The notes under the pieces: model-generated
What the model was told of the DNA's origin: nothing
Database searches by the model: none
The model's input: the letters and a program-made list of their open reading frames with translations, nothing else
Part shown: piece by piece, positions 1-60,393 of the stretch
How positions within the stretch are numbered: the stretch's first letter is position 1
Layout: the number at the start of each line of letters is the position of its first letter
From: Tubulanus polymorphus
Lineage: Eukaryota; Animalia; Nemertea
Assembly (NCBI RefSeq): GCF_964204645.1
Contig: NC_134036.1
Location: forward strand, 3,934,400-3,998,399
Reading direction: 5' to 3'
DNA: 64,000 nucleotides
Translations under genes and position numbers: made by a program

Positions 1-3000
1 GTTTATCGGCAAGAAAAGAACCGCCAGCCAGGCCACCACCTGATTCGGTATTTCTACCCGAAATACCGTGCAAAACTGAACGATTATTAACGGCAGCCAG
101 CAAAATAGATTACACAGATTTATCACCAAACTCCTACGTGCCAATATTAATTCTGTAGGGTCAATCCTACCAGAGCCAGACCTGCTTCCAGATACGAGTC
201 TGTACATTTGCGCATAAGTCGACATTATTGTAACAAGTATGACAGAGTTGAACACGGCAAAAATTACGAATGAATATTGCCAGGCGTTGACCTCGATTGT
301 AATTAAATTCATAGGTAAACAAACTCCTGTACTGCCATAGAAGTTGTCTCCGAAATAAGATGACTGTGAAAGAGGTATCATAGAAATTGTACCTATGGAT
401 AACCAACATACGCCACAAATAATGGACACATATTTCGGAGATGTAATCGGGCTTCCAGAAAATGGATTAACGATATTTGAAAATCTGTGTCGCGTTAGAA
501 TAAGCAGAAAAGACAACGAGCCTTCACAAGAAATCGTCACCACAATTCCAGCGAAACTGCACAATGAACTGTCCGTCCAACTTTCCGAATAAAGAAAATA
601 GACTCCTTCATAGAGGTAATCCGCTCCCGCGATCAAAAACAAATAAACCGACATCAGAAAATCACAAGCTGCGATGTTGATGATTAGGATGTCAGAGGAT
701 GTGTTACGCTTTTCGGAGGACGATAGTCGAATTGATCGAAGACGAAATAAAACGACAACACTGTTGGCGAGGAAACTTAATGTGGCGATGACCCAAATGA
801 TAGCTCTGAGGACTGTGTTGCCCATCAGATCAGAACAGGAGGAAAATTGATCAGCTTCTGGAAGGCACTGATCAACATTTGGTGCCATGCAGCAAAACTT
901 GTATGCGTTTGATGCGAGAAAAGCCAGAGATGTCAGATTATTGAAAACGCCTTTTCCAACAGAAATAACTTTGGAATTGTTGGTTATATCAAGAAGTCTA
1001 AGTGACTGCAATCCAGAAAATGCATATATAGATATATCACGGATTCTGTTACCGCTGACATTCAGTGACTGTAGTGCGACCAAACCCTTGAAAACATTTT
1101 CTGCAAGGACCGATAGAGATAGTCCATAGAGATCGAGAACTCGAAGCGCCTTCATACCTAAGAAACTGCCTTCTACCAAATAGCTCAATGGATTGCCAGT
1201 AATGAATAACTGTTCTAAACTATGCAAACCGGTGAACGTATTTTTAGATAAAGATGTTATGTTATTACATGTAAGGTCTAATGTGTGTAGATTATGAAGG
1301 TTTGAAAACGAAGCTGATAATATGTGAGACAATTCATTGAATGAGATATTTAACATACGAAGATATACGAAAGAAGATAAGGTTGATTCGCTTAAACGAA
1401 TTCTATTGCCCGACAAAATCAAAACTCGAGTTGATGCGGAGAAGAGACCAGTGATATTTGATAAACCAGTTTTTCCACAATCGATCGAATAACCTTGACA
1501 CCTGCAATATGTAGGACACGTGACGTTACAGAAAGCCTCGTCATCAGTTGTGTGTTTACAATTTACGAAACCATCACAAACTTCAGATTGTGGAATACAC
1601 CGATTTTCCTGACCACATTTAAACATTCCCGGACAAGAAAATGTCTCGCAGTTTTGTTCATCTTCTGAATTAGGACAATCTGATTGACCGTCGCACACCT
1701 GTCTGATCGGTATACAGTAAGACGCAGGACATTTCACAGTGCCAGCTGGACATTCAAATTCTTCACATTTCAAAATGTGCTCAAGATTTCTACAAACTGG
1801 GAAACCATTTGTCATTCTATCTAGAATGCATCTGTGATGTCTTGAATAACAATGTGGAGAATTGAAAGAACATCTTTGTTCATCAGATTTTGTGCAAAGA
1901 TTAGTGAAGTTAGTCGTACAGTGGTTTTCATTGTCGCAGTGAACGGTAGGATTCACAATAACACTAGTTTCTACGAATTCATCTTCTTCAAGACTTCCGC
2001 TACAATCCACAACACCATCCTGATACAACTGAGAACTGATACAGTCTCCACTGTTACACATGAACCCTTGACACAGTTCAGCAGTGCATCCACTTTCATC
2101 GGAGCCGTCCTTACAATTGAAGATGCCATCACACCTTTTAGATTTACCGACACATTGACCATTTTTACAGCGAAATTGTTCAGACGAACACGGAGGATGA
2201 AAACACGAGTTCTCATCAGAACTATCCACACAATCGTGCATGAAATCACAGAATCCACTTATTGATATAACCTGACCATCATAGCATTGAAACTGACTGT
2301 GCAGATTGATATCCCTACAATTGAGTTCATCTTCACCGTGTTGACAGTCGTGTCTGGTATCACATACGCGATGGTCGCTGATACATCTTTGATCGTTACA
2401 TTTAAACTGCCACAATTTACAACCGCTTATAGAAGCTAACTCTTCGCCAGTTACATTGTAGGAACACAGAACAGAATGCGCTGTATATGTTTGGTTTTCC
2501 CAGGGCATCAATAACCAATCAACCGATTTATTATACGTTATTTCATCTCTGGTAACAAACGGTTTTATTGTCTTCGATTGATTGCTAGAATCCTTAGTTA
2601 GAATAGCGCCATATTGGTGCTGATAACGAAATCTTCCAACCAAATTTTCGACTTCTGTCGCCACCGATATCGCACCTATATCACCGCTGATGCCACGACA
2701 CATTTCTCTCGCGCTTCCAATATCTAAACTTCGGTTTTTGTCCCAATTTGTCAGTATATGAAAACATCGTCCGGCTATACCTACCCAACCGCGAGTACAG
2801 GTTGCGTTAAACATATTGTTATCAACCTTATCCTCATTCCCAGTCGGAGAAGTTTCGTCATCCGTCCTATTGCTATCTTTTCCAGTTGCATTTTTATCAT
2901 CGTTGATTCTGTCCGTTTCGCACATGAAAGTCGTGTGAACCTCATCAATTCCGCAGGGGAATCGAACCCAGTTCGCCGAACCTCGTGGATTATTCAGTAT

Positions 3001-3165
3001 CATCGCCGAACATGGCATATTGACGTCTTGTATTGGTTGTTTTCTCAGGGGAGATATCAATCCTTGAATAACTTCTGGTATCGTTTCGTTGTTACTCGGC
3101 GGCCGGTACCACTCTGTGTAGCTCATCGGTTTCCCATCGGTCCACGTGTAACGACCAGTTGTCAA
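1..3165 (-). CDS. GRL101: Copy 1 exon 3 (3' end lies beyond the window): CTLD C-half, LDLa repeats, LRRs, 7TM of a GRL101-like GPCR
   Basis: Acceptor ttttctcag|TTG at 3165. The LRR/7TM part is near-identical to copy 4 (offset 33576; one in-frame 3-nt indel). No stop-terminated ORF is listed in this frame, so it appears open to position 1. Confidence 0.9.
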   Translation of the reverse strand, partial: MTTGRYTWTDGKPMSYTEWYRPPSNNETIPEVIQGLISPLRKQPIQDVNMPCSAMILNNPRGSANWVRFPCGIDEVHTTFMCETDRINDDKNATGKDSNRTDDETSPTGNEDKVDNNMFNATCTRGWVGIAGRCFHILTNWDKNRSLDIGSAREMCRGISGDIGAISVATEVENLVGRFRYQHQYGAILTKDSSNQSKTIKPFVTRDEITYNKSVDWLLMPWENQTYTAHSVLCSYNVTGEELASISGCKLWQFKCNDQRCISDHRVCDTRHDCQHGEDELNCRDINLHSQFQCYDGQVISISGFCDFMHDCVDSSDENSCFHPPCSSEQFRCKNGQCVGKSKRCDGIFNCKDGSDESGCTAELCQGFMCNSGDCISSQLYQDGVVDCSGSLEEDEFVETSVIVNPTVHCDNENHCTTNFTNLCTKSDEQRCSFNSPHCYSRHHRCILDRMTNGFPVCRNLEHILKCEEFECPAGTVKCPASYCIPIRQVCDGQSDCPNSEDEQNCETFSCPGMFKCGQENRCIPQSEVCDGFVNCKHTTDDEAFCNVTCPTYCRCQGYSIDCGKTGLSNITGLFSASTRVLILSGNRIRLSESTLSSFVYLRMLNISFNELSHILSASFSNLHNLHTLDLTCNNITSLSKNTFTGLHSLEQLFITGNPLSYLVEGSFLGMKALRVLDLYGLSLSVLAENVFKGLVALQSLNVSGNRIRDISIYAFSGLQSLRLLDITNNSKVISVGKGVFNNLTSLAFLASNAYKFCCMAPNVDQCLPEADQFSSCSDLMGNTVLRAIIWVIATLSFLANSVVVLFRLRSIRLSSSEKRNTSSDILIINIAACDFLMSVYLFLIAGADYLYEGVYFLYSESWTDSSLCSFAGIVVTISCEGSLSFLLILTRHRFSNIVNPFSGSPITSPKYVSIICGVCWLSIGTISMIPLSQSSYFGDNFYGSTGVCLPMNLITIEVNAWQYSFVIFAVFNSVILVTIMSTYAQMYRLVSGSRSGSGRIDPTELILARRSLVINLCNLFCWLPLIIVQFCTVFRVEIPNQVVAWLAVLFLPIN

Positions 3166-3589: not shown

Positions 3590-4951
3590 CTGTAATTTCA
3601 AGCCGATCATTATTATGAGCGCTTTTCTCGAAAATGCCATCTTCATCAGTCGTCTTACAGCGAATAACGTTTTGATAGCCATCATCTCCTCTTCTGAGTT
3701 GATACTGAGTAGATTTCCCGCGTACTTCTGTCTACAGTACAATTCAGCATTCTCCCAATTCAGACGTACTTTTCTGATGAATTTCACGCAGGAAAATCCC
3801 GAATCTAAAAGCCCTGCTGATTCGCAGACTCTGTCGCGTTGTTTCGGCATTAGATTCTGTTCTAAGACGTATTGTATGTGAAATCTGGGTATTCTGTTTT
3901 TCACCTCGAGCCACTGCGGTTCTTCCTGCAGACTATAGAATGTAATTCCCGGTACACCGTACGTTTCGCATAGTTTATTCTCGTGACGGGCGTTACTCCT
4001 CTCTTTTCTTCCGTCGTTGTAGATGACCTCCTGCACGAATACGACCGCTTCTGTTTTGTATCGCGATTCTTTGACGCACGGCGCTTCTTCCATATCTTTG
4101 ATAACGAATCGGTAATACTGAATTCGCGCGCGGTTCACCCCGAACCTGACGTTGTATTTCAAAACGACGTCTGAAATGCCAGCCGTTCCCGGGTAGTTCG
4201 GTGACTGCATGACTCCGCAATCGACCACACGACGCTCCGTCCAAATGATGTGTTCGTTGTGCTTTCTCAATCTTTGGCAGGTGCGCCGCAATTCGACGAT
4301 GAACGCGAACCTCCAGAAAAAATCGGCCGTGTCGATTTGCACAGTGTAGACAACGCTGTTATTGTTGAGGCGCTGGCTACTGAGCAGGATATATTTTATA
4401 CATTGCCTGGAATGGTACATAGGGAACAGATGATCGGGCACGTGCGAGCAGATTTCGTATTCGTACGGCGTCAATATGTAAATACTACGAGGCGCAACCT
4501 GTCGGTTTTCGGGCATTATCCTGAAACAGCGCGACGTCACCGTAACCCAGCGCTCTCCTTGTCGCAGAGTGTAGCCGTCACAGTCAGTCGGGCGTAACTT
4601 CAAACTCGCTTTCCTCCGATCGTATACCAACCTCTTGCCCTGACAATTGTATGTGTAGCCAACTACGATAACCGGGCCGCCCGAGGTAATCAGACTGACG
4701 ACGCTGCGTCGATAACCCCACGAACTGGGGCAATACGGACCGTATCGTCTAGCCGTGAAATTACCACCGTCGTATATGTAAAATCCGACGTTTTCGCAAT
4801 CAACCGATAACACCCCTAGTTCGAGACTCTGTTCAGTTATTTGGACTTTCCAGGTGAATTCGTACGCGTTTACGTTATATTTCAACGTCCTCGTTGGTGA
4901 TGGAAGCATCGTGAAATATGGCAATGACGCCGGAGCAAGATAGCCGCGTAT
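3590..4951 (-). CDS. Copy 1 exon 2: CUB-like domains plus N-half of C-type lectin domain (454 codons)
   Basis: Acceptor ttatttcag|ATA, donor CAG|gtgcat, both phase 0. CUB motifs YIYDG..GPYC and CG.MQSPNYPG; CTLD motifs SCVKF..LNWENAELYC..AGNLLSINS..MIGL. Confidence 0.9.
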
Positions 4952-5360: not shown

Positions 5361-6572
5361 CGAAGGCTTATGAATGCGAAACTCTGATAATGAAAGCAAT
5401 TTCATTCTGAATTCTATTCTCACATTCATATTTGTGATGTTCGGTCTGGTAAGAACGCACAGTGTGACGAGAAATCCTTCAGATTTGAAACTCAGTGATT
5501 TCAGGTAGTTATAACCGAGTAAAATATCAGTTCCTACAACGCGTAACCCTTCTTGTTTATATACACCGATTAAGTCATCGGATGTTACGAGATCACGTGT
5601 CCAGTTGAAGACGACGTACTGTAACACCTGCACTGTGATAGACCAGCAGTGTAAGTGTTTTGATCGAGTTATTACGTGTAAACTGTTGTCATCGGGAATG
5701 AGCACTCCCGAATCGTTATTAGAGACCTGAATCAACGGATTAGAGACGTTCCAATCTGATATTCTGTATATCTGGATTAAAAGCTCAGTCGTTGTCTTGC
5801 GTTGATCCGACACGAAAATGGCGGCTTTATTAGTTTTGGTATAAAACGATGACGGCTGCTGTCCGCTTTGTACGCCTATAAGCGCTATCGGTTCACTGCT
5901 GATGTTCCAGCTGTCGTAGATTCGAAAACTCGCCGTTGGATCGACGCCGGCGCCAGGGTATAGTTTCAGGTCCAAATCTACGAATGTGAAATTCATCGCC
6001 AAACCATCCGGGATGTCGATCCATTCGATGAACAACTGACATCGGAAATTAAGGTACATCGCGAATTTGTATCCGGTCGATGTGTTTAACTTATTCACTT
6101 TAAAATACGATCTCCCGCAGCTGTGAGTGATTCTCAATTGGTTTCTTTCGTAACGATATATGATATAAACCCGACTACCTCGCGCACCATCGACGTTACT
6201 TCTAAACATTAATGAGATCGAATCGTTACGAACGATGTCGTATTTTCCGTTACCGCATATGGTCTTCCCGTCGACGAATAGGTAGTTATCGCTGCAGAAT
6301 ATTGACAGCTCGATATCGTAGTACGTTTCGACGTGAAAAGTTCCCGGTAAAGAGCTGTTGACGAACCAACGACATTCAACACCGCGCGTTAACGAAGGGT
6401 AATTCGGCGAAGCGATGTAACCGGACGTAGAATCTAGCGGGTTCCACGTATTGTTACAAGACGAACTTACCGTCACAGACGATTCCTCGATAGAGTCTGC
6501 GCGATCAGCGCGCGCGATGCGAACTTGACAGACGATCAGCGACGCTAACAGCGTTCTCAGTCGCTGCTCCAT
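5361..6572 (-). CDS. Copy 1 exon 1: signal peptide plus CUB and CUB-like domains (404 codons); gene = 6572-5361, 4951-3590, 3165-<1
   Basis: ATG-GAG start conserved in all six copies; hydrophobic LLASLIVC segment; canonical CUB (C..SGYIASPNYP..CRW..C.DNYL..ICG..FRS); donor TCG|gtaagt. Confidence 0.88.
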
Positions 6573-6699
6573 ACCGAACAACATCAACACGGTGATGAAA
6601 GATCAAAATTTCTAAAATCTGTCCGATCAAAAAATACATTACTCTGGTGGAGCCATGAATACTTCAACTACTCGCTTGTCTTGTTTCAAATGAGCGATT

Positions 6700-6775
6700 T
6701 CGATGCCGGATTTACAGTGAATAAAGAATGAGACTATGCCTCGGATTTCCTCACTATATCGACGACGCCCGCGGG
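6700..6775 (-). promoter_or_regulatory. Conserved upstream block (putative core promoter or 5' UTR)
   Basis: gatttcctcactatatcgacgacgcccg lies about 120-215 bp upstream of the ATG in copies 1, 2, 3, 4 and the divergent copy 6; it is absent in copy 5. Confidence 0.5.
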
Positions 6776-10731: not shown

Positions 10732-13700
10732 TCATTTTCTTCTTTTATTCTTTGCTCGTATGGATTTCATATCGATAGTCAGTATGGTGTAAAGAAGGGG
10801 ATTGAGGGACGAGTTGATCGGCAAGAAAAGAACCGCCAGCCAAGCCGCCACCTGATTCGGTATTTGTACCCCGAATACGGCGCAAAACTGGACGATAATT
10901 AACGGCAGCCAGCAAAATAGATTACAGAGATTTATCACCAAACTCCTACGTGCCAAAATCAGTTCGGTAGGGTCGATTCTCCCAGAGCCAGACCTGCTTC
11001 CTGATACGAGTCTGTACATTTGCGCATATGTCCCCATTATTGTAGCAAGTATGACAGAGTTAAACACGGCAAAAATAGCGAATGAATATTGCCAGGCGTT
11101 GACATCAATGGTGATTAAATTCATAGGTAAACAAACACCGGTAGTGCCGTAGAAATTATCTCCAAAGTAAGGGTAAGGCGCTAGAGGCAGCAATGCAATG
11201 CCACTCAAAACAATCCAACATGTACAGCAAATAATGGACACAAATCTTTGAGATTTCAGGTTTCCGGAAAATGGATTAACGATATTTGAATATCTGTGGC
11301 GCGTCATGATTAATAGAAACGTCAATGAGCCTTCACAAGAGATTGACACAACGACCCCTGCAAGATGACAAAATACACTTCCCGTCCAAGATTCGGAATT
11401 AAGGAAATAGACACCTTTGAAGATGTAATCTGCCCCGGCGATCAGGAACAGATAAACCGACATCATAAAATCGCAGACAGCTACATTGATGATGAGGATA
11501 TCCGAGGATGGATTGGATTTATCAGAAGAAAATCGAATCGCTTGAACGCGAAGAGAAATGACTATTCCGTTGGCGAAAAAGCTGAACGAAGCGATCACCC
11601 AAATGACGGTTCTAAGGACCGTGTTACCCATCAGGTCGGAGCACGACGAGAACGGGTCGGGTTCTGGAAAACATTCATCGACATTGGGTACCATGCAGCA
11701 AAACTTGTAAGCATCTGATCTCAGGGAGACTAATGATGTCAAATTGTCGAAAACGTTTCTGTCGACGGAAACGACTTTCGAGTTTTCGGACAAATCAAGG
11801 ATTTCAAGCGTCGTCAGCCCGGAAAATGCGTAAAGCGAAATACGATCGATTCTGTTAGCGCTGATGTTTAAAGACAGTAAAGCAGAAAGACCCGCAAACG
11901 AGTATTCATAAAGCGTCAGCATTGAAAGTCCGTGAAGGTCGAGAGATTGGAGAGACCTCAAACCTTGGAAACTGCCTTCTTCTAAATAAGTCAGTGGATT
12001 TCGCGTGATGAACAGTTCTTTCAAACTATACAAACCGGCGAACGTGTTGGCGGATAATGACGTTATGGTGTTATGGGTAAGGTCTAATGTATATAGATTA
12101 TGCAGGTTTGAGAATGAGTTCGGTAAGATGTCAGACAAATCGTTGGAGGAGAGATTGAGCATGCGAAGATAGACGTATGGGGAAAATGTTGACGGGTCCA
12201 AGATAATTTGATTTTTCGACAAAATTAAGACTCGAGTTGATGAAGAAAAGAGACCACTTATATTTGTTAAACGAGCATTGTAGCATTCGATCGAATGACC
12301 TTGGCACTGACAGCCTCTAGAGCACGTGGCACTGCAGAAAGCCTCATCATCAGTTGTATGTTTACAATTTACGACACCATTACAAACTTCGGATTGTGGG
12401 ATACATCGATTTTCCTGGCCACATTTAAACATTCCCGGACATGAAAATGTCTCGCAGTTTTCTTCGTCTTCTGAATTAGGACAGTCTGATTGACCATCGC
12501 ACACCTGTCTGATCGGTATACAGTACGATGCTGGACATTTGACAGTGCCAGCTGGACATTCAAATTCTTCACATCTCAATACGTGCTCAAGATTTCTACA
12601 AACTGGGTAACTATTCAGCAATCTCTCTAGAATACACCTGTGACGTCTTAAATAACAATGAGGAGAATTGAAAGAACATCTTTGTTCATCAGATTCTGTG
12701 CATAGAGTTGTGAAGTTAGTCGTACATTGGTTTTCATTATCGCAATGAACGGTAGGATTTACCGTAATATTAGTAGCTGCAACTATTTCATCTTCTTCAA
12801 GGCTACCACTACAATCCACGACACCATCCTGATACAACTGAGAACTGATACAGTCTCCACTGTTACACAGGAACCCCTGACACGTTTCAGTGGTGCATCC
12901 CATTTCATCGGAGTCGTCTTTACAATTAGTGACTGCATTACATCTGTCCGACCTACTAATACATTGACCATTTTCACAGCGAAATTGTTCAGACAAACAC
13001 GGGGGATGAAAACACGAGTTCTCATCGGAACCATCCACGCAATCCTGTATGAAATCACAGAATCCACTTATTGATATGACTTGACCATCGTAGCATCTGA
13101 AATGACCGTGTAAATTGTTAACCGAACAATCGAGTTCATCTTCACCGTGTTGACAGTCGTGTCTGGTATCACATACGCGATGGTCGCTGATACATCTTCG
13201 ATCGTTACATTCAAACTGCCACGATTTACAACCGCTTATAGAAGCCAACTCTTCGCTAGTTACGTTGCATGAACACAAAACAGAATGTGCTTTATCTGTT
13301 CTATTTTCCCAGGGAATCAATAACCAATTAACCGATTTATTGTATGTTATTTCATCTCTGGTAACAACTGGTTTCAGTGTCCTCCATTGATTGTTAGAAT
13401 CCTTAGTAAGAATAGCGCCATATTGGTGCTGATAACGAAACCTTCCAACCAAATTTTCGACAACTGTCGCCACCGATATCTCACCTATATCACCGCAGAT
13501 GCCACGACACATTTCTCTCGCGCTTCCAATATCTAAACTTCGGTTTTCGTTCCAATTTGTCAGTATTTGAAGACATCGTCCCGCTATACCTACCCAACCT
13601 CGTGTACAGGTTGCGTTGAACATATTGTTATCAACCTTATCCCGATTCCCAGTCGGAGACGTTTCGTTATCCGTCTTATTGCTATCTTTCCCAGTTTTAT

Positions 13701-13968: not shown

Positions 13969-14810
13969 CTGAGAAAATAGAATAAAATATTGTATCAGTC
14001 ATATAAAAAACCCAAACAACGCTCAATTACCTTCCACCTGCTTCGCTCCCGGAAAGTGCGTTGGGTTTTAAGGGACACAATATCAGATGAAATCTACCAA
14101 TCGAATGATAACGGGGTAAATCGGTATTCTAAGATTTAAAAAATAAACGTAAAAATGCCACGTAAAAATTAATGAATAACGTCCGAAAAGCGATAGTTCG
14201 TTCATAGCACCCCAACTGGTCCTCTTTTCAAAAAAGATATAAATTTCATCATTATTTTGAAAAATAATTGAATTCCATGATCTAATTCAACTGCAGATTG
14301 TCAATACACTCAAAACACGCTCCCACCTCCACTTCTGAATATATTTCGTCATAATATTGACCTCCACTCCCACTGACTAAAAGACTAAAAACTAAACTTT
14401 GCGCAAGCTGCTTTACACGAATCCAAATTATACAGCAAAAATCTTTATTAGCCCAGATGCCTTGTATCTGGTGAGTTAATCATAATTTTCTCCGTTTATC
14501 AACACCAGCCTGAATTAACTATCTTTCTTATTTAAAGACAAAACTTTTTTGAAATACTTGTAACTATTCGTTTCCGTATTAGTTAAACCTGGTATGTTCA
14601 AATTCTATACTCATCACCTAATTTATTATCATTATCTCGATGTCGTTATCAATGTTGTCATTATTATAATCGTGGGGGCTTGCACTAGAACCCCCGTATT
14701 AAGTAATCAATTTAAAAAACTCATTGATTGTTCATTTCCTTGTACGAGAAATCTTTCGTAGCTTTTCTCTATTTTGGGTTGTTTCTTAATATTCAATAGA
14801 TTTCATGCAC

Positions 14811-33465: not shown

Positions 33466-33495
33466 GCTATTTTATTTTCGTTACTAAAAAGTTTT

Positions 33496-47874: not shown

Positions 47875-49221
47875 CTGTAATTTTAATCCGATCATTATTA
47901 TGAGTGCTTTTCTCGAAAATGCCATCAACATCAGAGGATTTACAGCGAACAGCGTCTTGATGGCCAACATCTCCTGTTGTGAGTTGATACTGAGTAGATG
48001 TCCCGCGTACTTCTGTCTACAGTACAATTCAGCATTCTCCCAATTCAGACGTACTTTTCTGATGAATTTCACGCAGGAAAATCCCGAATCTAAAAGCCCT
48101 GCTGATTCGCAGACTCTGTCGCGTTGTTTCGGCATTAGATTCTGTTCAAAGACGTATTGTATGCGGAATCTGGGCATTCTGTTTTTCACCTCGAGCCACA
48201 GCGATCCTTCCTTCAGACTATAGAATGTGACTCCCGGTACACCGTACGTTTCGCATAGTTTTTTCTCGTGACGGGCGTTACTCTGGTCTCTACCCTTTCT
48301 GTCGGCGTAGAACACTTCCTGCACGAATACGACCGCTTCCGTTTTATGTTGCGATTCTTTGATGCAAGGCGCTTCTTCCATATCTTTAATAACGAATCGG
48401 TAATACTGAATTCGCGTGCTGTTCAGCCTGAACCCGACGTTGTATTTCAAGACGACGTTGGATCTGCCGGCCGTTCCCGGGTAGTTCGGCGACTGCACGA
48501 TTCCACAATCGACCACACTTCGCTTCGTCCAGTCGATGTGATCGTTATGCTTTTTCAATCTTTGGCAGGTGCGCCGCAATTCGACGATGTAGGCGAACCT
48601 CCAGAACGCGTCGGCCTTATTGATTTTCACGGTGTACATAAGGCTGTTGCTGTTGTTGAGCCGCTGGCTACTGAGCGGCATGGCTCGTAAACATGACTTG
48701 GTAGAGAACATATGATCGGGCACGCACGAGCCGATTTCGTATTCGTACGGCGTCAATATGTAAATACTACGTGGCGCAACCCGTCGTTTTTCGGGCATAA
48801 TCCTGAAACAGCGCGACGTCACCGTAACCCGGCGCTCTCCTTGTCGCAGAGTGTAGCCGTCGCAGTCAGATGGACGTAACTTAAAGATACCTTCACCCAA
48901 GCGCTTGCCTGGACAGTTGTATGTGTAGCCTAATACGATAACCGGGCCGCCCGAGGTAATCAGACTGACGACGCTGCGTCGATAACCCGACGAACTGGGG
49001 CAATACGGGCCGTATCGTCGAGCCGTGAAATTACCACCGTCGTATATGTAAAATCCGGCATTTTCGCAATTCACGGACAGCACCGTTAGCTTGAGACTTT
49101 GTTCGTATATCTGGACTTTCCACGTGAATTCGTACAAATTGATACGGTACTTCAACGTCCTCGTTGGAAATGGGAGCAGCGTGTAGGACGCCAATGACGT
49201 CGTAGCCAACTTGCCGTGTAT
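47875..49221 (-). CDS. Copy 5 exon 2: CUB-like domains plus CTLD N-half (449 codons)
   Basis: Acceptor atttcag|ATA CAC GGC; donor CAG|gtgcat. Confidence 0.9.
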
Positions 49222-49561: not shown

Positions 49562-50773
49562 AACAGGCTTGATAATGCGGAGCTCTGACTTCGTGAGCGA
49601 TTTCGTTCTGAAGTCTATTTCTACCATTACATTTGTCATATTCTTCGTAAGAACGCACAGTATGACTATAAAACCGTCAGAGTTGACACTCAGTGATTCC
49701 AAGTAGTTATAACCGAGTAAAATATCAGTTCCTACAACGCGTAGCCCTTCTTGTTTATATACACCAATGACGTCATCGGATGTGCTGAGACCACGTGTCC
49801 AGTTGAAGACGACGTACTGTAACACCTGCACAGTGATAGACCAGCAGTGTAAGTGTTTTGATCGAGTTATTACGTGTAAACTGTTGACATCGGGAATGAG
49901 CACTCCCGACTCGTTATTAGAGATCTGTATCAACGGATTCGAGACGTTCCAATCGGATATTCTGTACATCTGGATTAAAAGCTCAGTCGTTGTTTTGAAT
50001 TGATCCGACACGAAAATGATGGCTTTGTTAGTTTTGGTATAAAACGATGACGGCTGCTGTCCGCTCTGTATACCTATAAGCGCTATCGGTTCACTGCTGA
50101 TGTTCCAGCTGTCGTAAATGCGAAAACTCGTCGCTGGGTCGACACCGGCACCAGGGTATAGTTTCAGGTCCAAATCTACGAATGTGAAATTCATCGCCAA
50201 ACCATCCGGGATTTCGATCCATTCGATGAACAACTGACATCGGAAATTAAGGAACATTGAGAATTTGTATCCGGTCGATGTTTTTAACTTATTCACTTTA
50301 AAACTCCATCTCCCGCAACTATGAGTGATTCTCAATTGGCTTCTTTCGTAACGATACACGATATAAACCCGACTACCTCGCGCACCATCGACGTTACTCC
50401 TAAACATCATCGAGATCGAATCGTTACGAACGATGTCGTATTTTCCGTTACCGCAGAAGGTTCTCCCGTCAATGAATAGGTAGTTGTCACTGCAGAAAAT
50501 TGACGGCTCGATATCGTAATACGTTTCGACGTGAAAAGTTCCCGGTAAAGAGCTGTTGACGAACCAATGACATTCAACACCGCGCGATAACGAAGGGTAA
50601 TTCGGTGAAACGATGTAACCGGACGTAGAATCTAGCGGGTACCACGTGTTGTTACAAGACGAACTAACCGTCACAGACGATTCCTCGATAGAGTCTGCGC
50701 GATCAGCGCGCGCGACGCGAACTTGAAAGACGATCAGCGACGCTATAAACAGCGCTCTCAGTCGCTGCTCCAT
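49562..50773 (-). CDS. Copy 5 exon 1: signal peptide plus CUB domains (404 codons); predicted protein 1933 aa
   Basis: ATG-GAG at 50773; donor GTT|gtaagt at the homologous position. Confidence 0.86.
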
Positions 50774-51090
50774 ACCGAACAACATCAACACTTCAGAATG
50801 ATTGTCGAACATCGGCAGAACAATTGGTCAAATTATGACAAAAATCGTCTATTGGATGTCATCCGTCTGTACGTTTTTGAATCGATTTTCGAATTATTGC
50901 AATTTTCTTCCCGATCCAAAATGTCCCCAGCTCGACGGGGGTTTAAGAATTGATGGACTATAATTGTAGTTGATGACTTCAAATTTCGTCGTATAGAATA
51001 TTCGAACTTTCCTTTAAAGTATAGCTTTCATTCGTGAATGAAGAAGTCCCACAATTCGAATTTCATACGATAAAGTTTATTAGAATGAAA

Positions 51091-53482: not shown

Positions 53483-56400
53483 TTATTTTGGGATACTTGG
53501 CTTTGTAAGATGTTGGCGGCGTTTATTTCTTGCTCGAATGGATTTCATATCGATAGTCAGTATTGTGTAGAGAAGTGGATTTAGGGACGAGTTGATCGGT
53601 AAGAAAAGAACCGCCAGCCAAGCCGCCACCTGATTCGGTATTTCTACCCGAAATACCGTGCAAAACTGAACGGTAATTAACGGCAGCCAGCAAAAGAGAT
53701 TACAAAGATTTATCACCAAACTTCTGCGTGCCAAAATAAGTTCAGTAGGGTCGATTCTACCCGAACCAGACCTGCTTCCAGATACGAGTCTGTACATCTG
53801 GACATAAGTCGTCATTATTGTAGAAAGTATGACAGAGTTAAAAATGGCAAAAATGGTGAATGAATATTGCCAGGCGTTGACATCAATTGATATTAAATTC
53901 ATAGGTAAACAAACTCCAGTTGTGCCGTAGAAGTTGTTTCCAAAATAAGATAACTGTGACACCGGTATTATAGCTATGGTACCCATGGATAACCAACATA
54001 CGCCACAAATAATCGACACATATCTCGGAGATGTAGTCGGGCTTCCTGAAAATGGATTAACAATATTTGAGAATCTATTACGAGTAAGAATAAGCAGAAA
54101 AGATAACGAGCCTTCGCAAGAAATTGTCACTATAACTCCAGCGAAACTACACAATGCACTATTCGTCCAACTTTCCGAATAAAGAAAATAAACTCCTTTG
54201 AAAACGTAATCTGCTCCCGCGATTAAGAACAAATAAATCGACATCAGAAAATCACAAACTGCGATATTGATGATGAGGATGTCAGAGGATGTGCTATTGG
54301 TCTCAGAGGATGAAAGTCGAATAGCCAAAATACGGAATAAAATGACAATACTGTTCGCAAACAAACTGAACGCAGCGATGACCCAGATGATAGCTCTGAG
54401 AACTGTGTTACCCATCAAATCAGAACAGGAGGAAAATTGATCAGCTTTTGGAAGACACTGGTCAACATTCGGAGCCATGCAGCAAAATTTGTAAGCGCTT
54501 GAAGCGAGAAAAGCCAAAGATGTCAGATTATTGAAAACGCCTTTTCCAACAGAAATAACTTCGGAATTGTTGGTTATGTCGAGGATTCTGAGTGACCTCA
54601 ATCCCGAGAATGTGTACTTTGACATATGTTGGATTCTGTTACCGCTGATATTCAATGTCTGTAATGCGGTCAAACCTTTAAATACATTTCTCGCAAAGGT
54701 CGATAAATGAAGCCCATAAAGATTGAGAACTCGAAGCGATTTCAAACCTAGAAAACTGCCCTCTATTAAATATCTCAGCGGATTGCCAGTAATGAATAAC
54801 TGTTCTAAACTATACAAACCGGTGAACGTATTTGCGGATAAGAATGTTATGTTGTTATATGTAAGATCTAATGTATGCAGATTATGCAGGTTTGAGAAGG
54901 AGTTCGGTAAAATATAAGACAATTCATTGAAGGAGAGGTTAAGCATACGAAGATATACAAAAGAAGATAATATTGACTCGCTTATAAGGATTCTGTTTTT
55001 TGATAATATTAAAAGTCGAGTCGATGCCGAGAAGAGAGTAGTTATATCTGTTAGACCAGCATTTTCACAATCGATCGAACGGCCTTGACATTTACAGCCT
55101 CTAGGACACGTGACATTACAGAAAGCCTCATCATCAGTTGTATGTTTACAATTTACGACACCATCACAAACTTCAGATTGTGGAATACATCGATTTTCCT
55201 GACCACATTTAAACATTCCCGGACATGAAAATGTCTCGCAGTTTTGCTCATCTTCTGATATAGGACAATCTGATTGACCATCGCACACCTGTCTGATCGG
55301 TATACAGTACGATGCTGGACATTTTACAGTACCAGCTGGACATTCAAATTCTTCACATCTTGATACGTGTTCAAGATTTCTACAAACTGGGAAACCATTT
55401 ATCATTCTTTCCAGAATACATCTGTGGCGTCTTGGATAACAGTGAGGAGAATCGAAGGAACATCTTTGTGCATCATATTCTGTGCAGAGTTTCGTACAGT
55501 GGTTATCATTAGTGCACTGAACCTCAGGATTTACTGTCACATTGGTAGTTGCTACTATTTCATCTTCTTCAAGGATTCCACTGCAATCCACAACTCCATC
55601 CTGATACAACTGAGAACTGATACAGTCCCCACTATTGCACAGGAACCCATGACATAGTTCAGCAGTGCATCCCATTTCATCGGAGCCGTCCTTGCAATCA
55701 GTGGCTCCATCACACCTGTTTGATTTACCGACACATTGACCATTTTTGCAGCGAAATTGTTCGGACAAACACGGTGGATGAAAACACGAGTTCTCATCGG
55801 AACCATCCACACAATCCTGTATGAAGTCACAGAAACCACTTATTGATATGAACTGACCATCATCGCATTGAAACTGACTGTGTAAATTGATATCCGTACA
55901 ATTGAGTTCATCTTCACCGTGTTGACATTCGTGTCTGGTATCACATACGTGATGGTCGCTGATACATCTGTGATCGTTACATTCAAACTGCCACGATTTA
56001 CAACCGCTTATAGAAGCTAATTCTTCATCAGTTACATTATATGAACACAAAACAGAATGCGCTGTATCTGTCACATTATCAAACTTTTTCATCTTCCATT
56101 GAACTGATTGAATATGAGTAATTTCATCTCTAGTGATTATTGGTATCAAAAGTATTAATCTGTATCGATCATCAATGGCCAGTATAGCACCATACCGGTG
56201 CTCATAGTGTAATGTTTGAATTATCCTCATATATTCTCTTCCATACGACAATGTAATACCTATTTTACCGTTTATTTTATTACACATTTCCGTTGCTTGT
56301 TCGACGTCCAAATTGTGATATTTATTCCAGTCAGTCAGTATTTGATAACATCGCCCTGCTATATCTACCCAACCCCGAATACAGGTTGAATCAGTGACGT

Positions 56401-56740
56401 CTAGCTTTGGAAATGAATAATTTTCAGCGGTTACTATTGTTTCATTGTCGTATCTCGTCAGATTGCCATCTTGCTTTGTTTCATTTCGATCCGATTCGCA
56501 AACAAACGTTGTATGAACCTCCTCGATTAGACATGGGAATCGAACCCAGTTCGCCGAACCTCGTGGATTATTCAGTATCATCGCCGTACACGGCACATTT
56601 ACGTCATTTATCGGTTGTTTTCTTAGAGGAGATATCAAGCCTCGAATAACTTCTGGTATCGTTTCGTTATTTGTAGGTTTATACCACTCCGTGTAGCTCA
56701 ATGGTTTCCCGTCAGTCCACGAGTAATGAGCTGCTCTAGG
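53483..56740 (-). CDS. GRL101: Copy 6 exon 3: CTLD C-half, LDLa, LRR, 7TM (1085 aa; most divergent copy)
   Basis: Acceptor gatttacag|CCT AGA (PRAAHYSWTDGKP); ORF 53483-56701. Confidence 0.94.
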   Translation of the reverse strand, partial: PRAAHYSWTDGKPLSYTEWYKPTNNETIPEVIRGLISPLRKQPINDVNVPCTAMILNNPRGSANWVRFPCLIEEVHTTFVCESDRNETKQDGNLTRYDNETIVTAENYSFPKLDVTDSTCIRGWVDIAGRCYQILTDWNKYHNLDVEQATEMCNKINGKIGITLSYGREYMRIIQTLHYEHRYGAILAIDDRYRLILLIPIITRDEITHIQSVQWKMKKFDNVTDTAHSVLCSYNVTDEELASISGCKSWQFECNDHRCISDHHVCDTRHECQHGEDELNCTDINLHSQFQCDDGQFISISGFCDFIQDCVDGSDENSCFHPPCLSEQFRCKNGQCVGKSNRCDGATDCKDGSDEMGCTAELCHGFLCNSGDCISSQLYQDGVVDCSGILEEDEIVATTNVTVNPEVQCTNDNHCTKLCTEYDAQRCSFDSPHCYPRRHRCILERMINGFPVCRNLEHVSRCEEFECPAGTVKCPASYCIPIRQVCDGQSDCPISEDEQNCETFSCPGMFKCGQENRCIPQSEVCDGVVNCKHTTDDEAFCNVTCPRGCKCQGRSIDCENAGLTDITTLFSASTRLLILSKNRILISESILSSFVYLRMLNLSFNELSYILPNSFSNLHNLHTLDLTYNNITFLSANTFTGLYSLEQLFITGNPLRYLIEGSFLGLKSLRVLNLYGLHLSTFARNVFKGLTALQTLNISGNRIQHMSKYTFSGLRSLRILDITNNSEVISVGKGVFNNLTSLAFLASSAYKFCCMAPNVDQCLPKADQFSSCSDLMGNTVLRAIIWVIAAFSLFANSIVILFRILAIRLSSSETNSTSSDILIINIAVCDFLMSIYLFLIAGADYVFKGVYFLYSESWTNSALCSFAGVIVTISCEGSLSFLLILTRNRFSNIVNPFSGSPTTSPRYVSIICGVCWLSMGTIAIIPVSQLSYFGNNFYGTTGVCLPMNLISIDVNAWQYSFTIFAIFNSVILSTIMTTYVQMYRLVSGSRSGSGRIDPTELILARRSLVINLCNLFCWLPLITVQFCTVFRVEIPNQVAAWLAVLFLPINSSLNPLLYTILTIDMKSIRARNKRRQHLTKPSIPK

Positions 56741-56869: not shown

Positions 56870-58171
56870 CTCATATGTTAGCCCAATCATGACTATGAGA
56901 GCAGTTCGCGTGTATCCCTCCTTGAGCAGTTCCCGGGCGAACAGACTTTTGATGGCCATCATTTCCTGTTGTGAGTTGATACTGAGTAGATGTCCCGCGT
57001 ACTTCTGCCTACAATACAATTCAGCATTCTCCCAATTCAGAATTTTATCTCCGATGTATTTTACGCACGAAATTCCAGAATCTAGAAATCCTGATTTACA
57101 GACATTTCCAACCCGTTTGACGAGTGATTTCTCTTCGACCGTATATTGTATTTGAAAAGTGGGGATGAAATTTTTCACCTCAAACCAGAGCTGCATGATA
57201 TCCAGACTATACAATACAACCCCCGGTACTGACACTCTACCGCATATTTTAGTTACGTGTTGAACTTGCTTACGTCGTGTAGTTCCGTAGAAGTTCTGTA
57301 CACGTTGCACCAACAAAACGGGATCGTTGTCCATCCCGGATGACTTCTCGCACGACGTCGCTTCGATATGTTTCAACATGAATCTATAAAATTGGACTCG
57401 ATCGAGTTTGCGTCTGAATTCGAATGTATAGCGTTTAGGTTCTCGTTCGCTTTCCGCTTTGCCGGGGTAGTTCGTCGACTGCACGCGACCGCATTCCGGA
57501 GTCAACGCGGACAGGTCGGTGTTCTTGTCGATTGTTTTCAGTCGCATGCATTTACGTCGCAGTTTGACGACGATGAGCTTTTTCCAGAAGTCGTACGCAC
57601 TTTTTAGGTTGACCGTGTGCAAGACAACTCCATCGAGATGTCGAACGTTGAATCGCCACATGTGCCGACACGTCGATGTCGGAAAGTACTGATTGACGAC
57701 GCACGAATCGACTTCGTATTCGTGCTCGGACCAAATGTAGATATCTTTTAAAGGGAGGCGCCGGTTTTCGGGCGTTATCAGAACGCAGTCGGACGTCGCG
57801 TTGACGTGTTGTTCTCCTTTCTTTAGTAGTCGACTGTCGCAATCTGTCGGACGAAACACGTACCAGCCTGCATTAAAACCCACGCTATGGTCGTATAAGT
57901 AGATGACAACCATTACCAGTCCACCCGATGTAATCAGACTGACGACGTTACGGTCGTATCTCCTTAAACGAGGACAATACGGACCGTAGCGTCTAGCCGT
58001 GAAATTACCACCGTCGAATATGTAAAATCCAGCTCGCTCGCAGTTCTCTGATAAAACTGTTAGTTCCATATTTTCTTCATAAATGTGAACGGCTGACTTG
58101 AATTCGTATGAATAAAAGCGATAAAACCTACCCGAAGGAAAAGGAGTCAAGCGCCGCTGTCTATCAGTAAG
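56870..58171 (-). CDS. Copy 6 exon 2: CUB-like domains plus CTLD N-half (434 codons)
   Basis: Polypyrimidine acceptor ttttttttatcttatag|CTT, phase 0; donor GAG|gtaaac; 129-bp intron 2. Confidence 0.87.
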
Positions 58172-59181: not shown

Positions 59182-60393
59182 CTGTTTATGGAAGATACGG
59201 AAATCAGACTTCGAAAATGATTTCACTCTGCGCACAATCCTTACATTCGATCCTGTGATGTTCGGTCTCGTAAGAACGCACAGTATGACGAGAAAGCCGT
59301 CAGATTTAACACTCAGTGATTGCAGGTAGTTGTGACCGAGTAAAATATCAGTTCCTACAACACGTAACCCTTCTAGTTTAAATACACCGATGACGTCACC
59401 GGATGTGCTGAGATCACGTGTCCAGTTGAAGACGACGTACTGTAACACCTGCACTGTGATAGACCAGCAGTGTAAGTGTTTTGATCGAGTTATTACGTGT
59501 AAACTGTTGACATCGGGAATGAGCACTCCCGACTCGTTATTAGAGATCTGTATCAACGGATTCGAGACGTTCCAATCGGATATTTTGTACATCTGGACTA
59601 AAAGCTGTGTCAGAAATTTCAGTTGACGATATTGCAGTGATATGACGGCTTTGTTTGTTTTAGTATAAAACGATGAAGGTGGATGTCCGGTTTGTTCTCG
59701 CATAAGAGCTACAGGTTTACTGCTGCTGTTCCATCCGTCGTAAATCTTAACAGTCGCCACCAATGGATCAATCCCAGCATTTAATTGGAAAACTGTTTGA
59801 GTGAAGGTGAGATTCATTGCATAGCCACGAGGCATCCCGATCCTTTCTAGATACAACCGGCAATTTCGTAGACGTGTTATCGAAAATTTGTGTCCCGTAT
59901 CTGTTTCTAACCGTCCTAACCTTAGATTATATCTTGAACAGTCGTGAGTGATTCTGAATCGGCTTCGTTCATAACGATATATGATATAAACCCGACTACC
60001 TCGCGCACCATCGACGTTACTTCTAAACATCAACGAGATCGAATCGTTACGGCGGATATCAGGTTTTCCATCACCGCACAATCTGATATCAGACTCTTCG
60101 GCGAGAATGTAGCTGTCCTTGCAGAGTATCGACGGTTCGATGTCGAGGTAAAACCGGACGTGAATAGTTCCCGGTAAAGAACCGTTGGCGAACCAACGAC
60201 ATTCAAGACCGCGCGATAACGAAGGGTAATTCGGCGAAACGATGTAACCGGACGTAGAATCTAGCGGGTACCACGTGTTGTTACAAGACGAACTTACCGT
60301 CACAGACGATTCCTCGATAGAGTCTGCGCGATCGGCGCGCGCGATGCGAACTCGACAGACGATCAGCGACGCTAACAGCGTTCTCAGCTCCAT
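59182..60393 (-). CDS. Copy 6 exon 1: signal peptide plus CUB domains (404 codons); predicted protein 1923 aa
   Basis: ATG-GAG at 60393; donor CAG|gtacgt at the homologous position. Confidence 0.86.

What the first reader, a model, noticed from the sequence alone, without database searches (positions are those of the whole stretch)
1..60393. Hidden 3-exon genes encode a six-copy family of ~1,940-aa CUB-CTLD-LDLa-LRR-7TM receptors
Seen: in all six units the three ORFs are linked by phase-0 GT-AG introns at homologous positions. Intron 2 splits a C-type lectin domain (...IMIGLKLQ | LTTGRYTWTDGKPMSYTEW...), so the pieces must be one protein. Known: GRL101/type C2 LGRs combine LDLa, LRR and rhodopsin 7TM, and CUB, CTLD and LRR are typical recognition modules. 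Inference: this is a GPCR with an ectodomain of about 1,600 aa, amplified in tandem with all copies intact. It is a candidate pattern-recognition or chemosensory receptor repertoire signalling directly through G proteins. I cannot confirm from sequence alone that this architecture is undescribed.
Basis: partly seen in the sequence, partly recalled or inferred. Interest (0 to 1): 0.9.

Follow-up and report, generated by a model that had tools for sequence, protein, structure and literature searches.

The report
Giant GRL101-type receptor gene array
Six intact neighbouring genes of the ribbon worm Tubulanus polymorphus each encode a G-protein-coupled receptor of about 1,940 residues with a very large modular outer part; the receptor type (GRL101-like) is already known, but here it has multiplied to roughly 290 copies in the genome and its ligands are unknown.

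Summary
The window carries six minus-strand units. Each has three long ORFs joined by phase-0 GT-AG introns at homologous positions. No unit has an in-frame stop, and the predicted proteins are 1,918-1,951 aa.

Exon 3 is a strong LDLa-LRR-7tm_1 receptor. Its nearest solved relative is RXFP1, and its nearest named relatives are GRL101-like. Exon 1 starts with a signal peptide and a genuine CUB domain. Intron 2 does split a C-type lectin-like domain.

No RNA data could be found, so the support for splicing is comparative. All three exons show dN/dS below 1. The exon order and splice sites are conserved in more than 25 distant paralogues. A RefSeq model of a paralogue uses the same exon 2/exon 3 junction.

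Two parts of the reading fail:
- The family has about 290 copies genome-wide, not six. Two other windows of this scan flagged the same family.
- The architecture is not undescribed. CUB-CTLD-LDLa-LRR-7TM proteins are annotated in a sea cucumber and in another nemertean. A CTL-LDL-LRR-GPCR cluster was published for Biomphalaria in 2025.

The lectin-like domain lacks the canonical sugar-binding motifs. The proposed chemosensory or immune role is plausible but untested.

Verdict: a very large lineage-specific expansion of a known receptor kind.

The parts
5361..6584 (-). Unit 1, exon 1 (ATG at 6584; signal peptide, CUB, further beta-sandwich modules)
3590..4951 (-). Unit 1, exon 2 (variable CUB-like region and N-terminal half of the CTLD)
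1..3165 (-). Unit 1, exon 3 (C-terminal half of the CTLD, LDLa, LRR, 7TM). The last 26 codons and the stop lie 79-81 nt beyond the window's left edge.
16608..17828 (-). Unit 2, exon 1 (407 codons)
17751..17828 (-). Unit 2 signal peptide (about 26 residues, hydrophobic core LLASLIVC)
   Evidence: read directly; the AF2 model has a helix at 2-16
17388..17702 (-). Unit 2 CUB domain 1 (exon 1, residues about 43-147)
   Evidence: The family profile hits cubilin/MASP CUB at E 5e-12. 23 of 26 paralogues match Pfam CUB, best 4e-8.
16998..17381 (-). Unit 2 second beta-sandwich, CUB-like (exon 1, residues about 150-277); variable across the family
   Evidence: AF2 pLDDT 70-87. PCPE-1, neuropilin and enteropeptidase CUB match at Z 7.4-7.6, but cupins and CBMs score alike.
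16191..16607 (-). Unit 2 intron 1 (417 nt, GTAAGT...TTTCAG, phase 0)
14811..16190 (-). Unit 2, exon 2 (460 codons)
15066..16190 (-). Unit 2 fast-evolving region of exon 2 (residues 1-375). It carries CUB-like motifs (C-G-x-SPNYP, YDGG...YCP) and has no sequence relatives outside this genome.
14811..15053 (-). Unit 2 N-terminal half of the C-type lectin-like domain (exon 2, residues about 380-460)
   Evidence: Pfam Lectin_C profile positions 2-34. 20 of 26 paralogues match. It aligns to snake-venom C-type lectin residues 1-57.
13969..14810 (-). Unit 2 intron 2 (842 nt, GTGCAT...TCTCAG, phase 0); it splits the CTLD
10732..13968 (-). Unit 2, exon 3 (1,078 codons plus stop)
13714..13968 (-). Unit 2 C-terminal half of the CTLD (exon 3, residues 1-85: W-T-D-G...Y-T-E-W, three Cys)
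13264..13608 (-). Unit 2 second, degenerate CTLD-like module (exon 3, residues about 121-235)
   Evidence: Weak:
12331..13230 (-). Unit 2 LDLa module array (5 stretches scored by Pfam)
   Evidence: (E 2e-30)
11635..12324 (-). Unit 2 LRRNT, leucine-rich repeats and cysteine-rich hinge
   Evidence: (LRR_8, E 4e-33)
10789..11619 (-). Unit 2 rhodopsin-type 7TM domain (HRY in place of DRY; CWLP and NPLLY kept)
   Evidence: (7tm_1, E 4e-20)
27670..28896 (-). Unit 3, exon 1
25877..27256 (-). Unit 3, exon 2
21794..25030 (-). Unit 3, exon 3
39259..40485 (-). Unit 4, exon 1
37466..38845 (-). Unit 4, exon 2
33496..36744 (-). Unit 4, exon 3
49562..50785 (-). Unit 5, exon 1 (homologous ATG at 50785; an upstream in-frame ATG at 50812 is also open)
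47875..49221 (-). Unit 5, exon 2
44098..47340 (-). Unit 5, exon 3
59182..60393 (-). Unit 6 (divergent copy), exon 1
56870..58156 (-). Unit 6, exon 2. The acceptor at 58156 is the best in-frame candidate and is less certain than the other sites.
53483..56740 (-). Unit 6, exon 3

Best explanation
The window is a tandem array of six intact paralogous genes. They belong to a family of about 290 GRL101-type (type C) leucine-rich-repeat G-protein-coupled receptors in the palaeonemertean Tubulanus polymorphus.

Each gene has three exons joined by two phase-0 GT-AG introns. Each encodes, in this order:
- a signal peptide;
- one firm CUB domain;
- about 700 residues of CUB-like or unassigned beta-rich modules, partly fast-evolving;
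- a C-type lectin-like domain, split by intron 2;
- a second, degenerate lectin-like module;
- five or more LDLa modules;
- an LRR domain with a cysteine-rich hinge;
- a rhodopsin-type 7TM domain.

Shown here: the gene structure, the domain order, that all copies are intact, purifying selection, the copy number, and mosaic relationships among the copies.

Inferred: the proteins are cell-surface receptors. The distal, variable modules would bind external ligands. The signal would then pass through the LDLa/LRR stalk to the 7TM domain and on to G proteins, by analogy with RXFP1, where LRR binding and an LDLa module drive activation. The size of the family and its variable ectodomain point to many exogenous ligands (chemosensory or non-self recognition) rather than a hormone. 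The array diversifies by tandem duplication plus gene conversion or unequal crossing-over.
For: Gene model:
- Splice sites were read directly and are conserved in all six units.
- There are no stops, and dN/dS is 0.15-0.67 in every exon.
- Between divergent units the exons stay 70-93% identical, while introns and spacers fall to about 50%.
- In 12 of 12 paralogues from six chromosomes, intron 2 begins with GT and ends with AG at the homologous codon. Its length is 72-684 nt and often not a multiple of three.
- In more than 25 loci exon 1, exon 2 and exon 3 lie in that order on one strand, separated by gaps of about 80-700 nt.
- The RefSeq protein LOC141911221 reads ...IGLKWK directly followed by NDGYYTWTDG. 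On the genome these residues are the end of exon 2 and the start of exon 3 of a paralogue on C9.

Identity:
- Pfam finds LDLa, LRR_8 and 7tm_1.
- The best solved relative is RXFP1-Gs (7TMW) at E 5e-74 over LRR, hinge and 7TM. This is well above LGR4 and FSHR.
- The best named relatives are GRL101-like proteins of Priapulus, Procambarus and Argopecten.
- CUB is supported.
- The CTLD halves are supported. In the multi-CTLD protein P0064, the end of the exon 2 profile and the start of the exon 3 profile map to adjacent residues (1706 and 1709).

Family size:
- The motif count is 289 against 0 in the control.
- 150 of 150 scored loci reach E<=1e-84.
- The first look gave 353-378 candidates per exon.
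- K-mer depth in DNA runs is 100-400 times the baseline over conserved exon parts.

Variable ectodomain: pN reaches 0.45-0.56 in exon 2 and in exon 1 residues 143-265, against 0.01-0.1 in CUB1, the CTLD and TM6-7.

Mosaicism.

Signalling motifs: R3.50, CWLP and NPLLY are retained.
Against: - There is no transcript evidence. The three runs that hold the locus are genomic DNA, because their contigs cover introns and spacers. The one possible RNA run gave no coverage.
- The RefSeq model that uses the junction is truncated. It starts at an internal Met eight codons before the junction, and it may be ab initio.
- The C-terminal half of the CTLD is not recognised by Pfam, and the AF2 model across the junction failed with pLDDT 38.
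- Apart from CUB1, the CUB assignment rests on weak leads.
- The acidic residue of DRY is replaced (HRY, NRF, QRY), so coupling could be atypical.
- The function is inference only. The CTLD lacks the EPN/QPD and WND motifs.
Confidence: 0.8

Rival explanations
1. The family is a chemosensory repertoire. Individual genes would be expressed in sensory neurons (cerebral organs, frontal organ, epidermal sensory cells) and would detect waterborne macromolecular or peptide cues.
For: The family has about 290 copies in tandem arrays on many chromosomes, which is typical of chemoreceptor families. The ectodomain modules are variable. GRL101-like genes are enriched in sensory tentacles of Acanthaster and Charonia (PMC6267866; PMC13403566).
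Against: No expression data exist for this species. An ectodomain of about 1,600 aa is unlike known odorant GPCRs. The published sensory links are correlative.
Confidence: 0.35
2. The family is an innate-immune or non-self recognition repertoire (pattern recognition, symbiont or parasite sensing, allorecognition) that signals directly through G proteins, as proposed for the Biomphalaria SudRes2 GRL101-like cluster.
For: CUB, CTLD and LRR are recognition modules. There are local windows where pN is at or above pS, confined to the ectodomain. The copies are mosaic. A cluster of the same architecture lies in a schistosome-resistance locus (PMC12297450).
Against: The CTLD is the most conserved ectodomain part, not the variable one, and it lacks the canonical Ca2+/sugar-site motifs (read directly). 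Overall dN/dS is below 1. In Biomphalaria the causal gene was not shown to be a GRL101 gene.
Confidence: 0.3
3. The genes are ordinary endocrine receptors for insulin/relaxin-like peptides, as proposed for type C2 LGRs.
For: RXFP1 is the closest solved relative. The literature suggests insulin-like peptides as ligands of type C2 LGRs (citing others).
Against: About 290 paralogues with fast-evolving distal modules do not fit a handful of hormones. GRL101 itself is still an orphan receptor.
Confidence: 0.05
4. The three ORFs of each unit are separate genes, or most copies are silent products of segmental duplication on their way to becoming pseudogenes.
For: No RNA evidence was found. About 16% of family loci have shortened exon 3 frames. 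The duplicates within the window are very young (dS 0.03-0.2).
Against: Exon 2 and exon 3 each hold half of one CTLD. Exon 2 has no start codon or signal peptide of its own at the conserved boundary. Gaps of about 75-120 nt in most paralogues leave no room for a promoter and a terminator. dN/dS stays below 1 even between old copies (unit 6 against the others, dS 0.4-1.3). About 84% of exon 3 frames are full length.
Confidence: 0.05

Closest known systems
GRL101 of Lymnaea stagnalis and the type C2 LGR clade (orphan GRL101-type receptors)
   Same: Multiple LDLa modules, then LRRs, then a rhodopsin-type 7TM domain. The best named database relatives are GRL101-like proteins.
   Different: There are about 1,100 extra N-terminal residues (CUB, CUB-like modules, CTLDs). 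DRY is replaced by HRY/NRF/QRY. The family has about 290 copies instead of a few.
Biomphalaria sudanica SudRes2 GRL101-like GPCR cluster (CTL-LDL-LRR-7TM; PMC12297450)
   Same: An N-terminal C-type lectin-like domain ahead of LDLa, LRR and 7TM. The genes form a tandem cluster of paralogues and have a proposed recognition role.
   Different: The snail has 12 clustered genes and about 18 in the genome, and no CUB modules are reported. Orthology was not tested here.
Apostichopus japonicus BSL78_14811 (2,007 aa) and Lineus longissimus LOC135489423 (2,706 aa)
   Same: The same domain order, CUB then Lectin_C then LDLa then LRR then 7tm_1, by Pfam. They are 31-34% identical over the exon 3 part.
   Different: They carry extra EGF, MAM or F5/8-C modules. 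Their N-terminal parts show no detectable sequence similarity to exons 1-2 here. No comparable expansion is known for them.
Human relaxin receptor RXFP1 (type C1 LGR; structure 7TMW)
   Same: The closest solved structure, at E 5e-74 in one continuous match over LRR, hinge and 7TM. It also has an LDLa module N-terminal to the LRRs.
   Different: RXFP1 has a single LDLa and no CUB or CTLD. It binds a peptide hormone, keeps the ERY motif, and is a single-copy gene.

Membership tests
Type C LGR / GRL101-type receptor | Rhodopsin-family 7TM domain | tested here: met
   PF00001 at E 3.7e-20, covering profile positions 11-260 of 260. Seven hydrophobic segments are present.
Type C LGR / GRL101-type receptor | LRR ectodomain with a cysteine-rich hinge directly before TM1 | tested here: met
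   LRR_8 at E 4e-33 in 4 stretches. Cys clusters flank the repeats. The match to RXFP1 is continuous over LRR, hinge and 7TM.
Type C LGR / GRL101-type receptor | LDLa module(s) N-terminal to the LRRs (several in the C2/GRL101 type) | tested here: met
   Ldl_recept_a at E 2e-30 in 5 stretches, and 6 stretches in paralogue L001.
Type C LGR / GRL101-type receptor | Placement inside the C2 clade rather than C1 in a phylogeny | not tested
   No tree with C1 and C2 references was built. The only evidence is that the best hits are annotated GRL101-like and that RXFP1 ranks above type A and type B receptors.
Type C LGR / GRL101-type receptor | Signalling motifs E/DRY, CWxP and NPxxY | tested here: inconclusive
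   R3.50, CWLP and NPLLY are kept. The acidic 3.49 residue is replaced by H, N or Q in all Tubulanus copies examined, whereas other GRL101-like proteins have D or E.
CUB domain (PF00431) | Match to the CUB profile above threshold | tested here: met
   Unit 6 scores 24.3 bits against a cut-off of 21.4. 23 of 26 paralogues match, best 4e-8. The family profile hits cubilin at E 5e-12. This holds for the first domain only; the further modules are inconclusive.
C-type lectin-like domain (PF00059) | Full-length CTLD fold: the N-terminal half (C-x-GW...C...W..A...C) plus the C-terminal half (WxDG...W, three Cys) | tested here: inconclusive
   N-terminal half: 20 of 26 paralogues match profile positions 2-34, and snake-venom C-type lectin residues 1-57 match at E 8e-5. 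C-terminal half: only weak hits to mannose-receptor CRD4 residues 82-101. The two halves map to adjacent positions in P0064. The AF2 test failed.
C-type lectin-like domain (PF00059) | Ca2+-dependent carbohydrate site (EPN or QPD motif plus WND) | tested here: not met
   Read directly. There is no EPN or QPD in the long-loop region, and W-V-R stands where WND is expected. It should therefore be called lectin-like, not a lectin.
Biomphalaria SudRes2-type CTL-LDL-LRR GPCRs | CTL, LDL, LRR and GPCR on one polypeptide, in tandem clusters | tested here: met
   Domain order, tandem array. The definition is taken from PMC12297450. Shared ancestry of the CTL fusion was not tested.

The most novel reading that the evidence does not exclude
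The roughly 290 genes would be the ribbon worm's main repertoire for recognising external macromolecules (prey, mates, microbes or non-self). In this reading it is an LGR-based variable receptor system. Conserved scaffold modules (CUB1, CTLD, LDLa, LRR, 7TM) are kept uniform by gene conversion. Interspersed CUB-like modules diversify and are reshuffled between neighbours. Binding is read out directly by a G protein.
Probability: 0.3. Interest if true: 0.75.

Novelty: new member of a known kind. Interest (0 to 1): 0.45.

Why it matters
LGR-type receptors are normally present in a handful of copies and bind hormones. A family of about 290 mostly intact genes, each about 5.8 kb of coding sequence, occupies roughly 1% of a 268-Mb genome. 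In the papers I could search, the largest GRL101-type family reported is far smaller (about 18 genes in Biomphalaria).

The family gives a concrete candidate for the unknown chemosensory or non-self receptors of Nemertea. It adds weight to the recent idea, from Biomphalaria, that lectin-bearing GRL101-like GPCRs are recognition receptors.

It also matters for annotation. The one RefSeq model seen for the family is truncated and skips part of exon 3.

Tried and rejected
- **RNA evidence.** The run search for RNA returned three runs of unknown kind that proved to be genomic DNA, since their contigs cover introns and spacers. It also returned one possible RNA run with no coverage. No splice junction could be tested. 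The three joints reported there are small indels or paralogue chimaeras, not the introns.
- **Representative search with exon 2** (1.84 billion proteins). Only the last 45 or so residues, the N-terminal half of the CTLD, found relatives. Residues 1-385 found nothing.
- **AF2 of exon 1.** Mean pLDDT was 50, and only residues 150-277 were usable.
- **AF2 across the CTLD junction.** I used the natural continuous ORF of paralogue L001, whose 84-nt intron 2 is in frame. Mean pLDDT was 38, so the model was unusable and no fold search was run on it.
- **First alignment for that job.** MAFFT misaligned it, pairing the second lectin-like module with the first. I discarded it.
- **hhalign between putative modules of exons 1-2.** Nothing was significant beyond the SPNYP motif, so I do not claim 'six CUB domains'.
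- **The 1,558-aa ORFs in L001 and L002.** They looked at first like intron loss. They are read-through of a short in-frame intron.
- **The look-up of encoding contigs for P0001.** It returned nothing; records of this genome appear to be withheld.
- **Proteins of this genome.** Apart from P0001 they did not appear in the protein searches, so I could not check whether RefSeq has full-length models.
- **Spliced protein.** I neither built nor submitted the joined protein. All searches were exon by exon, by reference, and protein lengths are sums of exon translations.

Full report
**What is in the window**

All long ORFs lie on the minus strand, in six repeats of the same triplet: about 425, 455 and 1,070 codons. 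The frame of a sixth large ORF runs off the left edge. Each first ORF opens with Met and a hydrophobic signal-like segment.

In unit 2:
- Exon 1 ends at 16608 and is followed by GTAAGT.
- Exon 2 begins at 16190 after a pyrimidine tract and CAG, and ends at 14811 before GTGCAT.
- Exon 3 begins at 13968 after TTTTCTCAG.

A scan for in-frame GT and AG at the ORF ends finds the same sites at the homologous codons in units 1-5. In the much more divergent unit 6 the sites have different flanking bases (AAACAG|GTACGT, TATGAG|GTAAAC, TTTACAG|CC). All are phase 0.

Exon-by-exon translation gives no stop in any of the 18 exons. The summed lengths are 1,918-1,951 aa. I fetched 300 nt beyond the window edge. 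Unit 1 closes with the family's usual C-terminus and a stop 79-81 nt outside the window.

Everything was searched exon by exon, by reference.

**Is it one gene per unit?**

No RNA evidence could be obtained. The only runs that hold the locus are short-read genomic assemblies, because their contigs cover introns and spacers. A possible 2015 RNA run of the species gave no coverage, which proves nothing. The case is therefore comparative, and it is strong.

1. All three exons evolve under purifying selection. dN/dS is 0.15-0.67, including comparisons with unit 6 at dS 0.4-1.3.
2. Between divergent units, exons keep 70-93% nucleotide identity. Introns and spacers drop to the roughly 50% of unalignable sequence.
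3. Genome-wide, hits to exon 1, exon 2 and exon 3 lie in that order on one strand. In most paralogues the gaps are only about 80-180 nt. I matched more than 25 such triplets on C6, C8, C10, C11 and C12 by coordinates.
4. I fetched twelve paralogues from six chromosomes. In 12 of 12, intron 2 starts with GT and ends with AG exactly at the codon homologous to 14811/13968. Its lengths are 72-684 nt and often not multiples of three, so the ORFs can only be joined by splicing.
5. In two paralogues (L001, L002) the intron is 84 nt and happens to be open in frame. An alignment shows that no other copy has residues in those 28 columns.
6. The one RefSeq protein of this family that the databases returned is Tubulanus polymorphus LOC141911221. 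It reads M-T-I-G-L-K-W-K followed directly by N-D-G-Y-Y-T-W-T-D-G. On the genome the first peptide is the end of an exon 2 homologue, followed by GT. The second is the start of an exon 3 homologue, preceded by CAG. An independent pipeline therefore used the same junction. That model is otherwise truncated.

**The organism**

LOC141911221 sits on a contig of 16,481,795 bp. That is exactly the length of contig C9 of the window's genome. It also matches C9 at 99% and 92% identity. The genome is therefore T. polymorphus, a palaeonemertean, of 268 Mb.

**Domains**

*Exon 3.* It is unambiguous: five LDLa stretches (E 2e-30), LRR_8 (E 4e-33) and 7tm_1 (E 4e-20). Its closest solved relative is RXFP1-Gs at E 5e-74, in one continuous match over LRR, hinge and 7TM. 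This is far above LGR4, FSHR and LHCGR. The closest named proteins are GRL101-like. It is a type C LGR of the GRL101 kind. I did not build the tree that would separate C2 from C1.

An alignment with other GRL101-like proteins shows R3.50, CWLP and NPLLY retained. The acidic residue of DRY is replaced (HRY, HRF, NRF, QRY) in every Tubulanus copy examined.

*Exon 1.* The first domain is a real CUB:
- The window copies score just under or just over Pfam's cut-off.
- 23 of 26 paralogues match, best 4e-8.
- A family profile hits cubilin and MASP CUB domains at E 5e-12.

A second module (residues about 150-277) folds with pLDDT 70-87 into a jelly-roll. It matches CUB domains of PCPE-1, neuropilin and enteropeptidase at Z about 7.5, but cupins and CBMs score the same.

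*The rest of exons 1-2.* It has no sequence relatives outside this genome among 1.84 billion representatives. CUB-like motifs and a language-model look-up point to CUB. Profile-profile comparison of the modules was not significant. I therefore call these modules CUB-like or unassigned.

*The split lectin domain.* The end of exon 2 matches Lectin_C profile positions 2-34 in 20 of 26 paralogues. It also matches residues 1-57 of snake-venom C-type lectins at E 8e-5.

The start of exon 3 carries W-T-D-G...Y-T-E-W and three spaced cysteines. It aligns only weakly, to residues 82-101 of mannose-receptor CRD4.

In a multi-CTLD protein (P0064), the end of the exon 2 profile and the start of the exon 3 profile land on adjacent residues of the same repeat (1706 and 1709). 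Two more repeats agree within 3-8 residues.

My attempt to show it by structure prediction failed, with pLDDT 38.

The domain has no EPN or QPD motif, and it has W-V-R where WND is expected. It is lectin-like, and a sugar-binding role is not indicated. A second, degenerate lectin-like module follows at exon 3 residues about 121-235.

**Family size**

The window is a small sample of the family.
- Exon queries against the whole genome returned 353-378 first-look candidates each. Every scored locus was a strong hit: 150 of 150 at E<=1e-84 for the start of exon 3.
- A degenerate 27-nt pattern for the invariant N-N-P-R-G-S-A-N-W motif occurs 289 times, against 0 for the reversed control.
- Independent genomic read sets show k-mer depths 100-400 times the baseline over conserved exon segments.
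- About 84% of the scored exon 3 frames are full length.
- The genes form tandem arrays on C3, C4, C5, C6, C8, C9, C10, C11, C12 and C22.
- Two other windows of this scan flagged the same family.

**How the family evolves**

Within the window the relationships differ by segment:
- Upstream regions and exon 1 group units 1, 2 and 4.
- Exon 2 groups units 2, 3 and 4.
- The LRR-7TM part comes in three types: units 2, 3 and 5; units 1 and 4; and unit 6. Between types it is only 69-80% identical at the DNA level.

This is the signature of gene conversion or unequal crossing-over, with breakpoints inside exon 3.

Across 23 family members, variability is strongly patterned:
- CUB1, exon 1 residues 276-365, the CTLD and TM6-7 are conserved (pN 0.01-0.1).
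- Exon 1 residues 143-265, most of exon 2, and the linker after the CTLD reach pN 0.35-0.56, against pS 0.55-0.74.
- In the conserved segments synonymous divergence is also depressed, at 0.09-0.25.
- Among the young window copies, a few 40-codon windows have pN at or above pS. All are in the ectodomain, but the counts are small and untested.

**Comparison with what is known**

The architecture is not new. Pfam places CUB, Lectin_C, LDLa, LRR and 7tm_1 in the same order in Apostichopus BSL78_14811 and Lineus LOC135489423.

A 2025 paper describes a tandem cluster of 12 GRL101-like GPCRs with CTL, LDL and LRR domains in Biomphalaria sudanica and proposes a recognition role (PMC12297450). GRL101-like genes have been linked to sensory organs in a starfish and a triton snail. 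GRL101-type receptors remain orphans.

I found no paper on such receptors in nemerteans.

What is new here is the scale (about 290 copies against about 18 in Biomphalaria), the lineage-specific fast-evolving modules, and the altered DRY motif.

**Verdict**

The gene models and domain reading are right. 'Six-copy' and 'undescribed architecture' are wrong. The function remains an inference.

The most likely mechanism is ligand capture by the distal variable modules, relayed through the LDLa/LRR stalk to a G-protein-coupled 7TM domain. I favour a repertoire for exogenous ligands. I split that reading about evenly between chemosensory and non-self recognition.

Noticed in passing
window 10732-21793 compared with the other units (breakpoints near 13400-12400 in unit 2 coordinates): The six copies are mosaics. 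The LRR-7TM part falls into three types (units 2/3/5, units 1/4, unit 6) that are only 69-80% identical at the DNA level. Upstream regions, exon 1 and exon 2 group the units differently. This points to gene conversion or unequal crossing-over inside exon 3.
   Followed up: partly
window 13780-13810 region (motif N-N-P-R-G-S-A-N-W) and exon 1 residues 1-75 and 276-365: Synonymous divergence is strongly depressed in some segments across the whole family: pS 0.09-0.25 against 0.55-0.74 elsewhere. The 27-nt motif is almost identical at the nucleotide level in most of the 100 copies listed of 289. The cause could be homogenisation by conversion or a nucleotide-level constraint; it is unexplained.
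   Followed up: partly
window 10789-11619 and homologous parts; TM3 end at about 11290: The DRY motif is HRY, HRF or NRF (QRY in a C9 paralogue) in all Tubulanus copies. Other GRL101-like proteins keep D or E at position 3.49. This may mean altered or constitutive coupling.
   Followed up: no
L001 3918-8594 (G000:C6:21319000-21328999) and L002 3962-8635: Two paralogues have an 84-nt intron 2 that is open in frame. This gives continuous ORFs of 1,557 and 1,558 codons. If the intron were retained, 28 residues would be inserted into the CTLD.
   Followed up: yes
L076 4011-4125 and L003 (G000:C9:2803500-2812378): The RefSeq model LOC141911221 (689 aa) starts at an internal Met eight codons before the end of exon 2. 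It also skips about 270 and about 126 residues inside the continuous exon 3 ORF. This is probably mis-annotation, though alternative splicing inside exon 3 is possible.
   Followed up: partly
window 7260-7646 and 18503-18890: A 201-202-nt unit is repeated 1.9 times at the same place in the spacers upstream of units 1 and 2. Its function is unknown.
   Followed up: no
window 13200-19199 in runs X1-X3: K-mer depth in independent genomic read sets jumps from about 40-100 in introns, spacers and mid exon 2 to 4,000-17,000 in parts of exon 1 and at the exon 2/3 ends. This is an assembly-free sign of hundreds of copies sharing exact 31-mers.
   Followed up: yes
window 60436-64000: The 3.6 kb upstream of unit 6 holds no ORF above 79 codons. 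It has a 59-nt tandem repeat at 63688-63888. The array ends here, and the next family clusters on C12 lie about 190 kb before the window and about 135 kb after it.
   Followed up: partly
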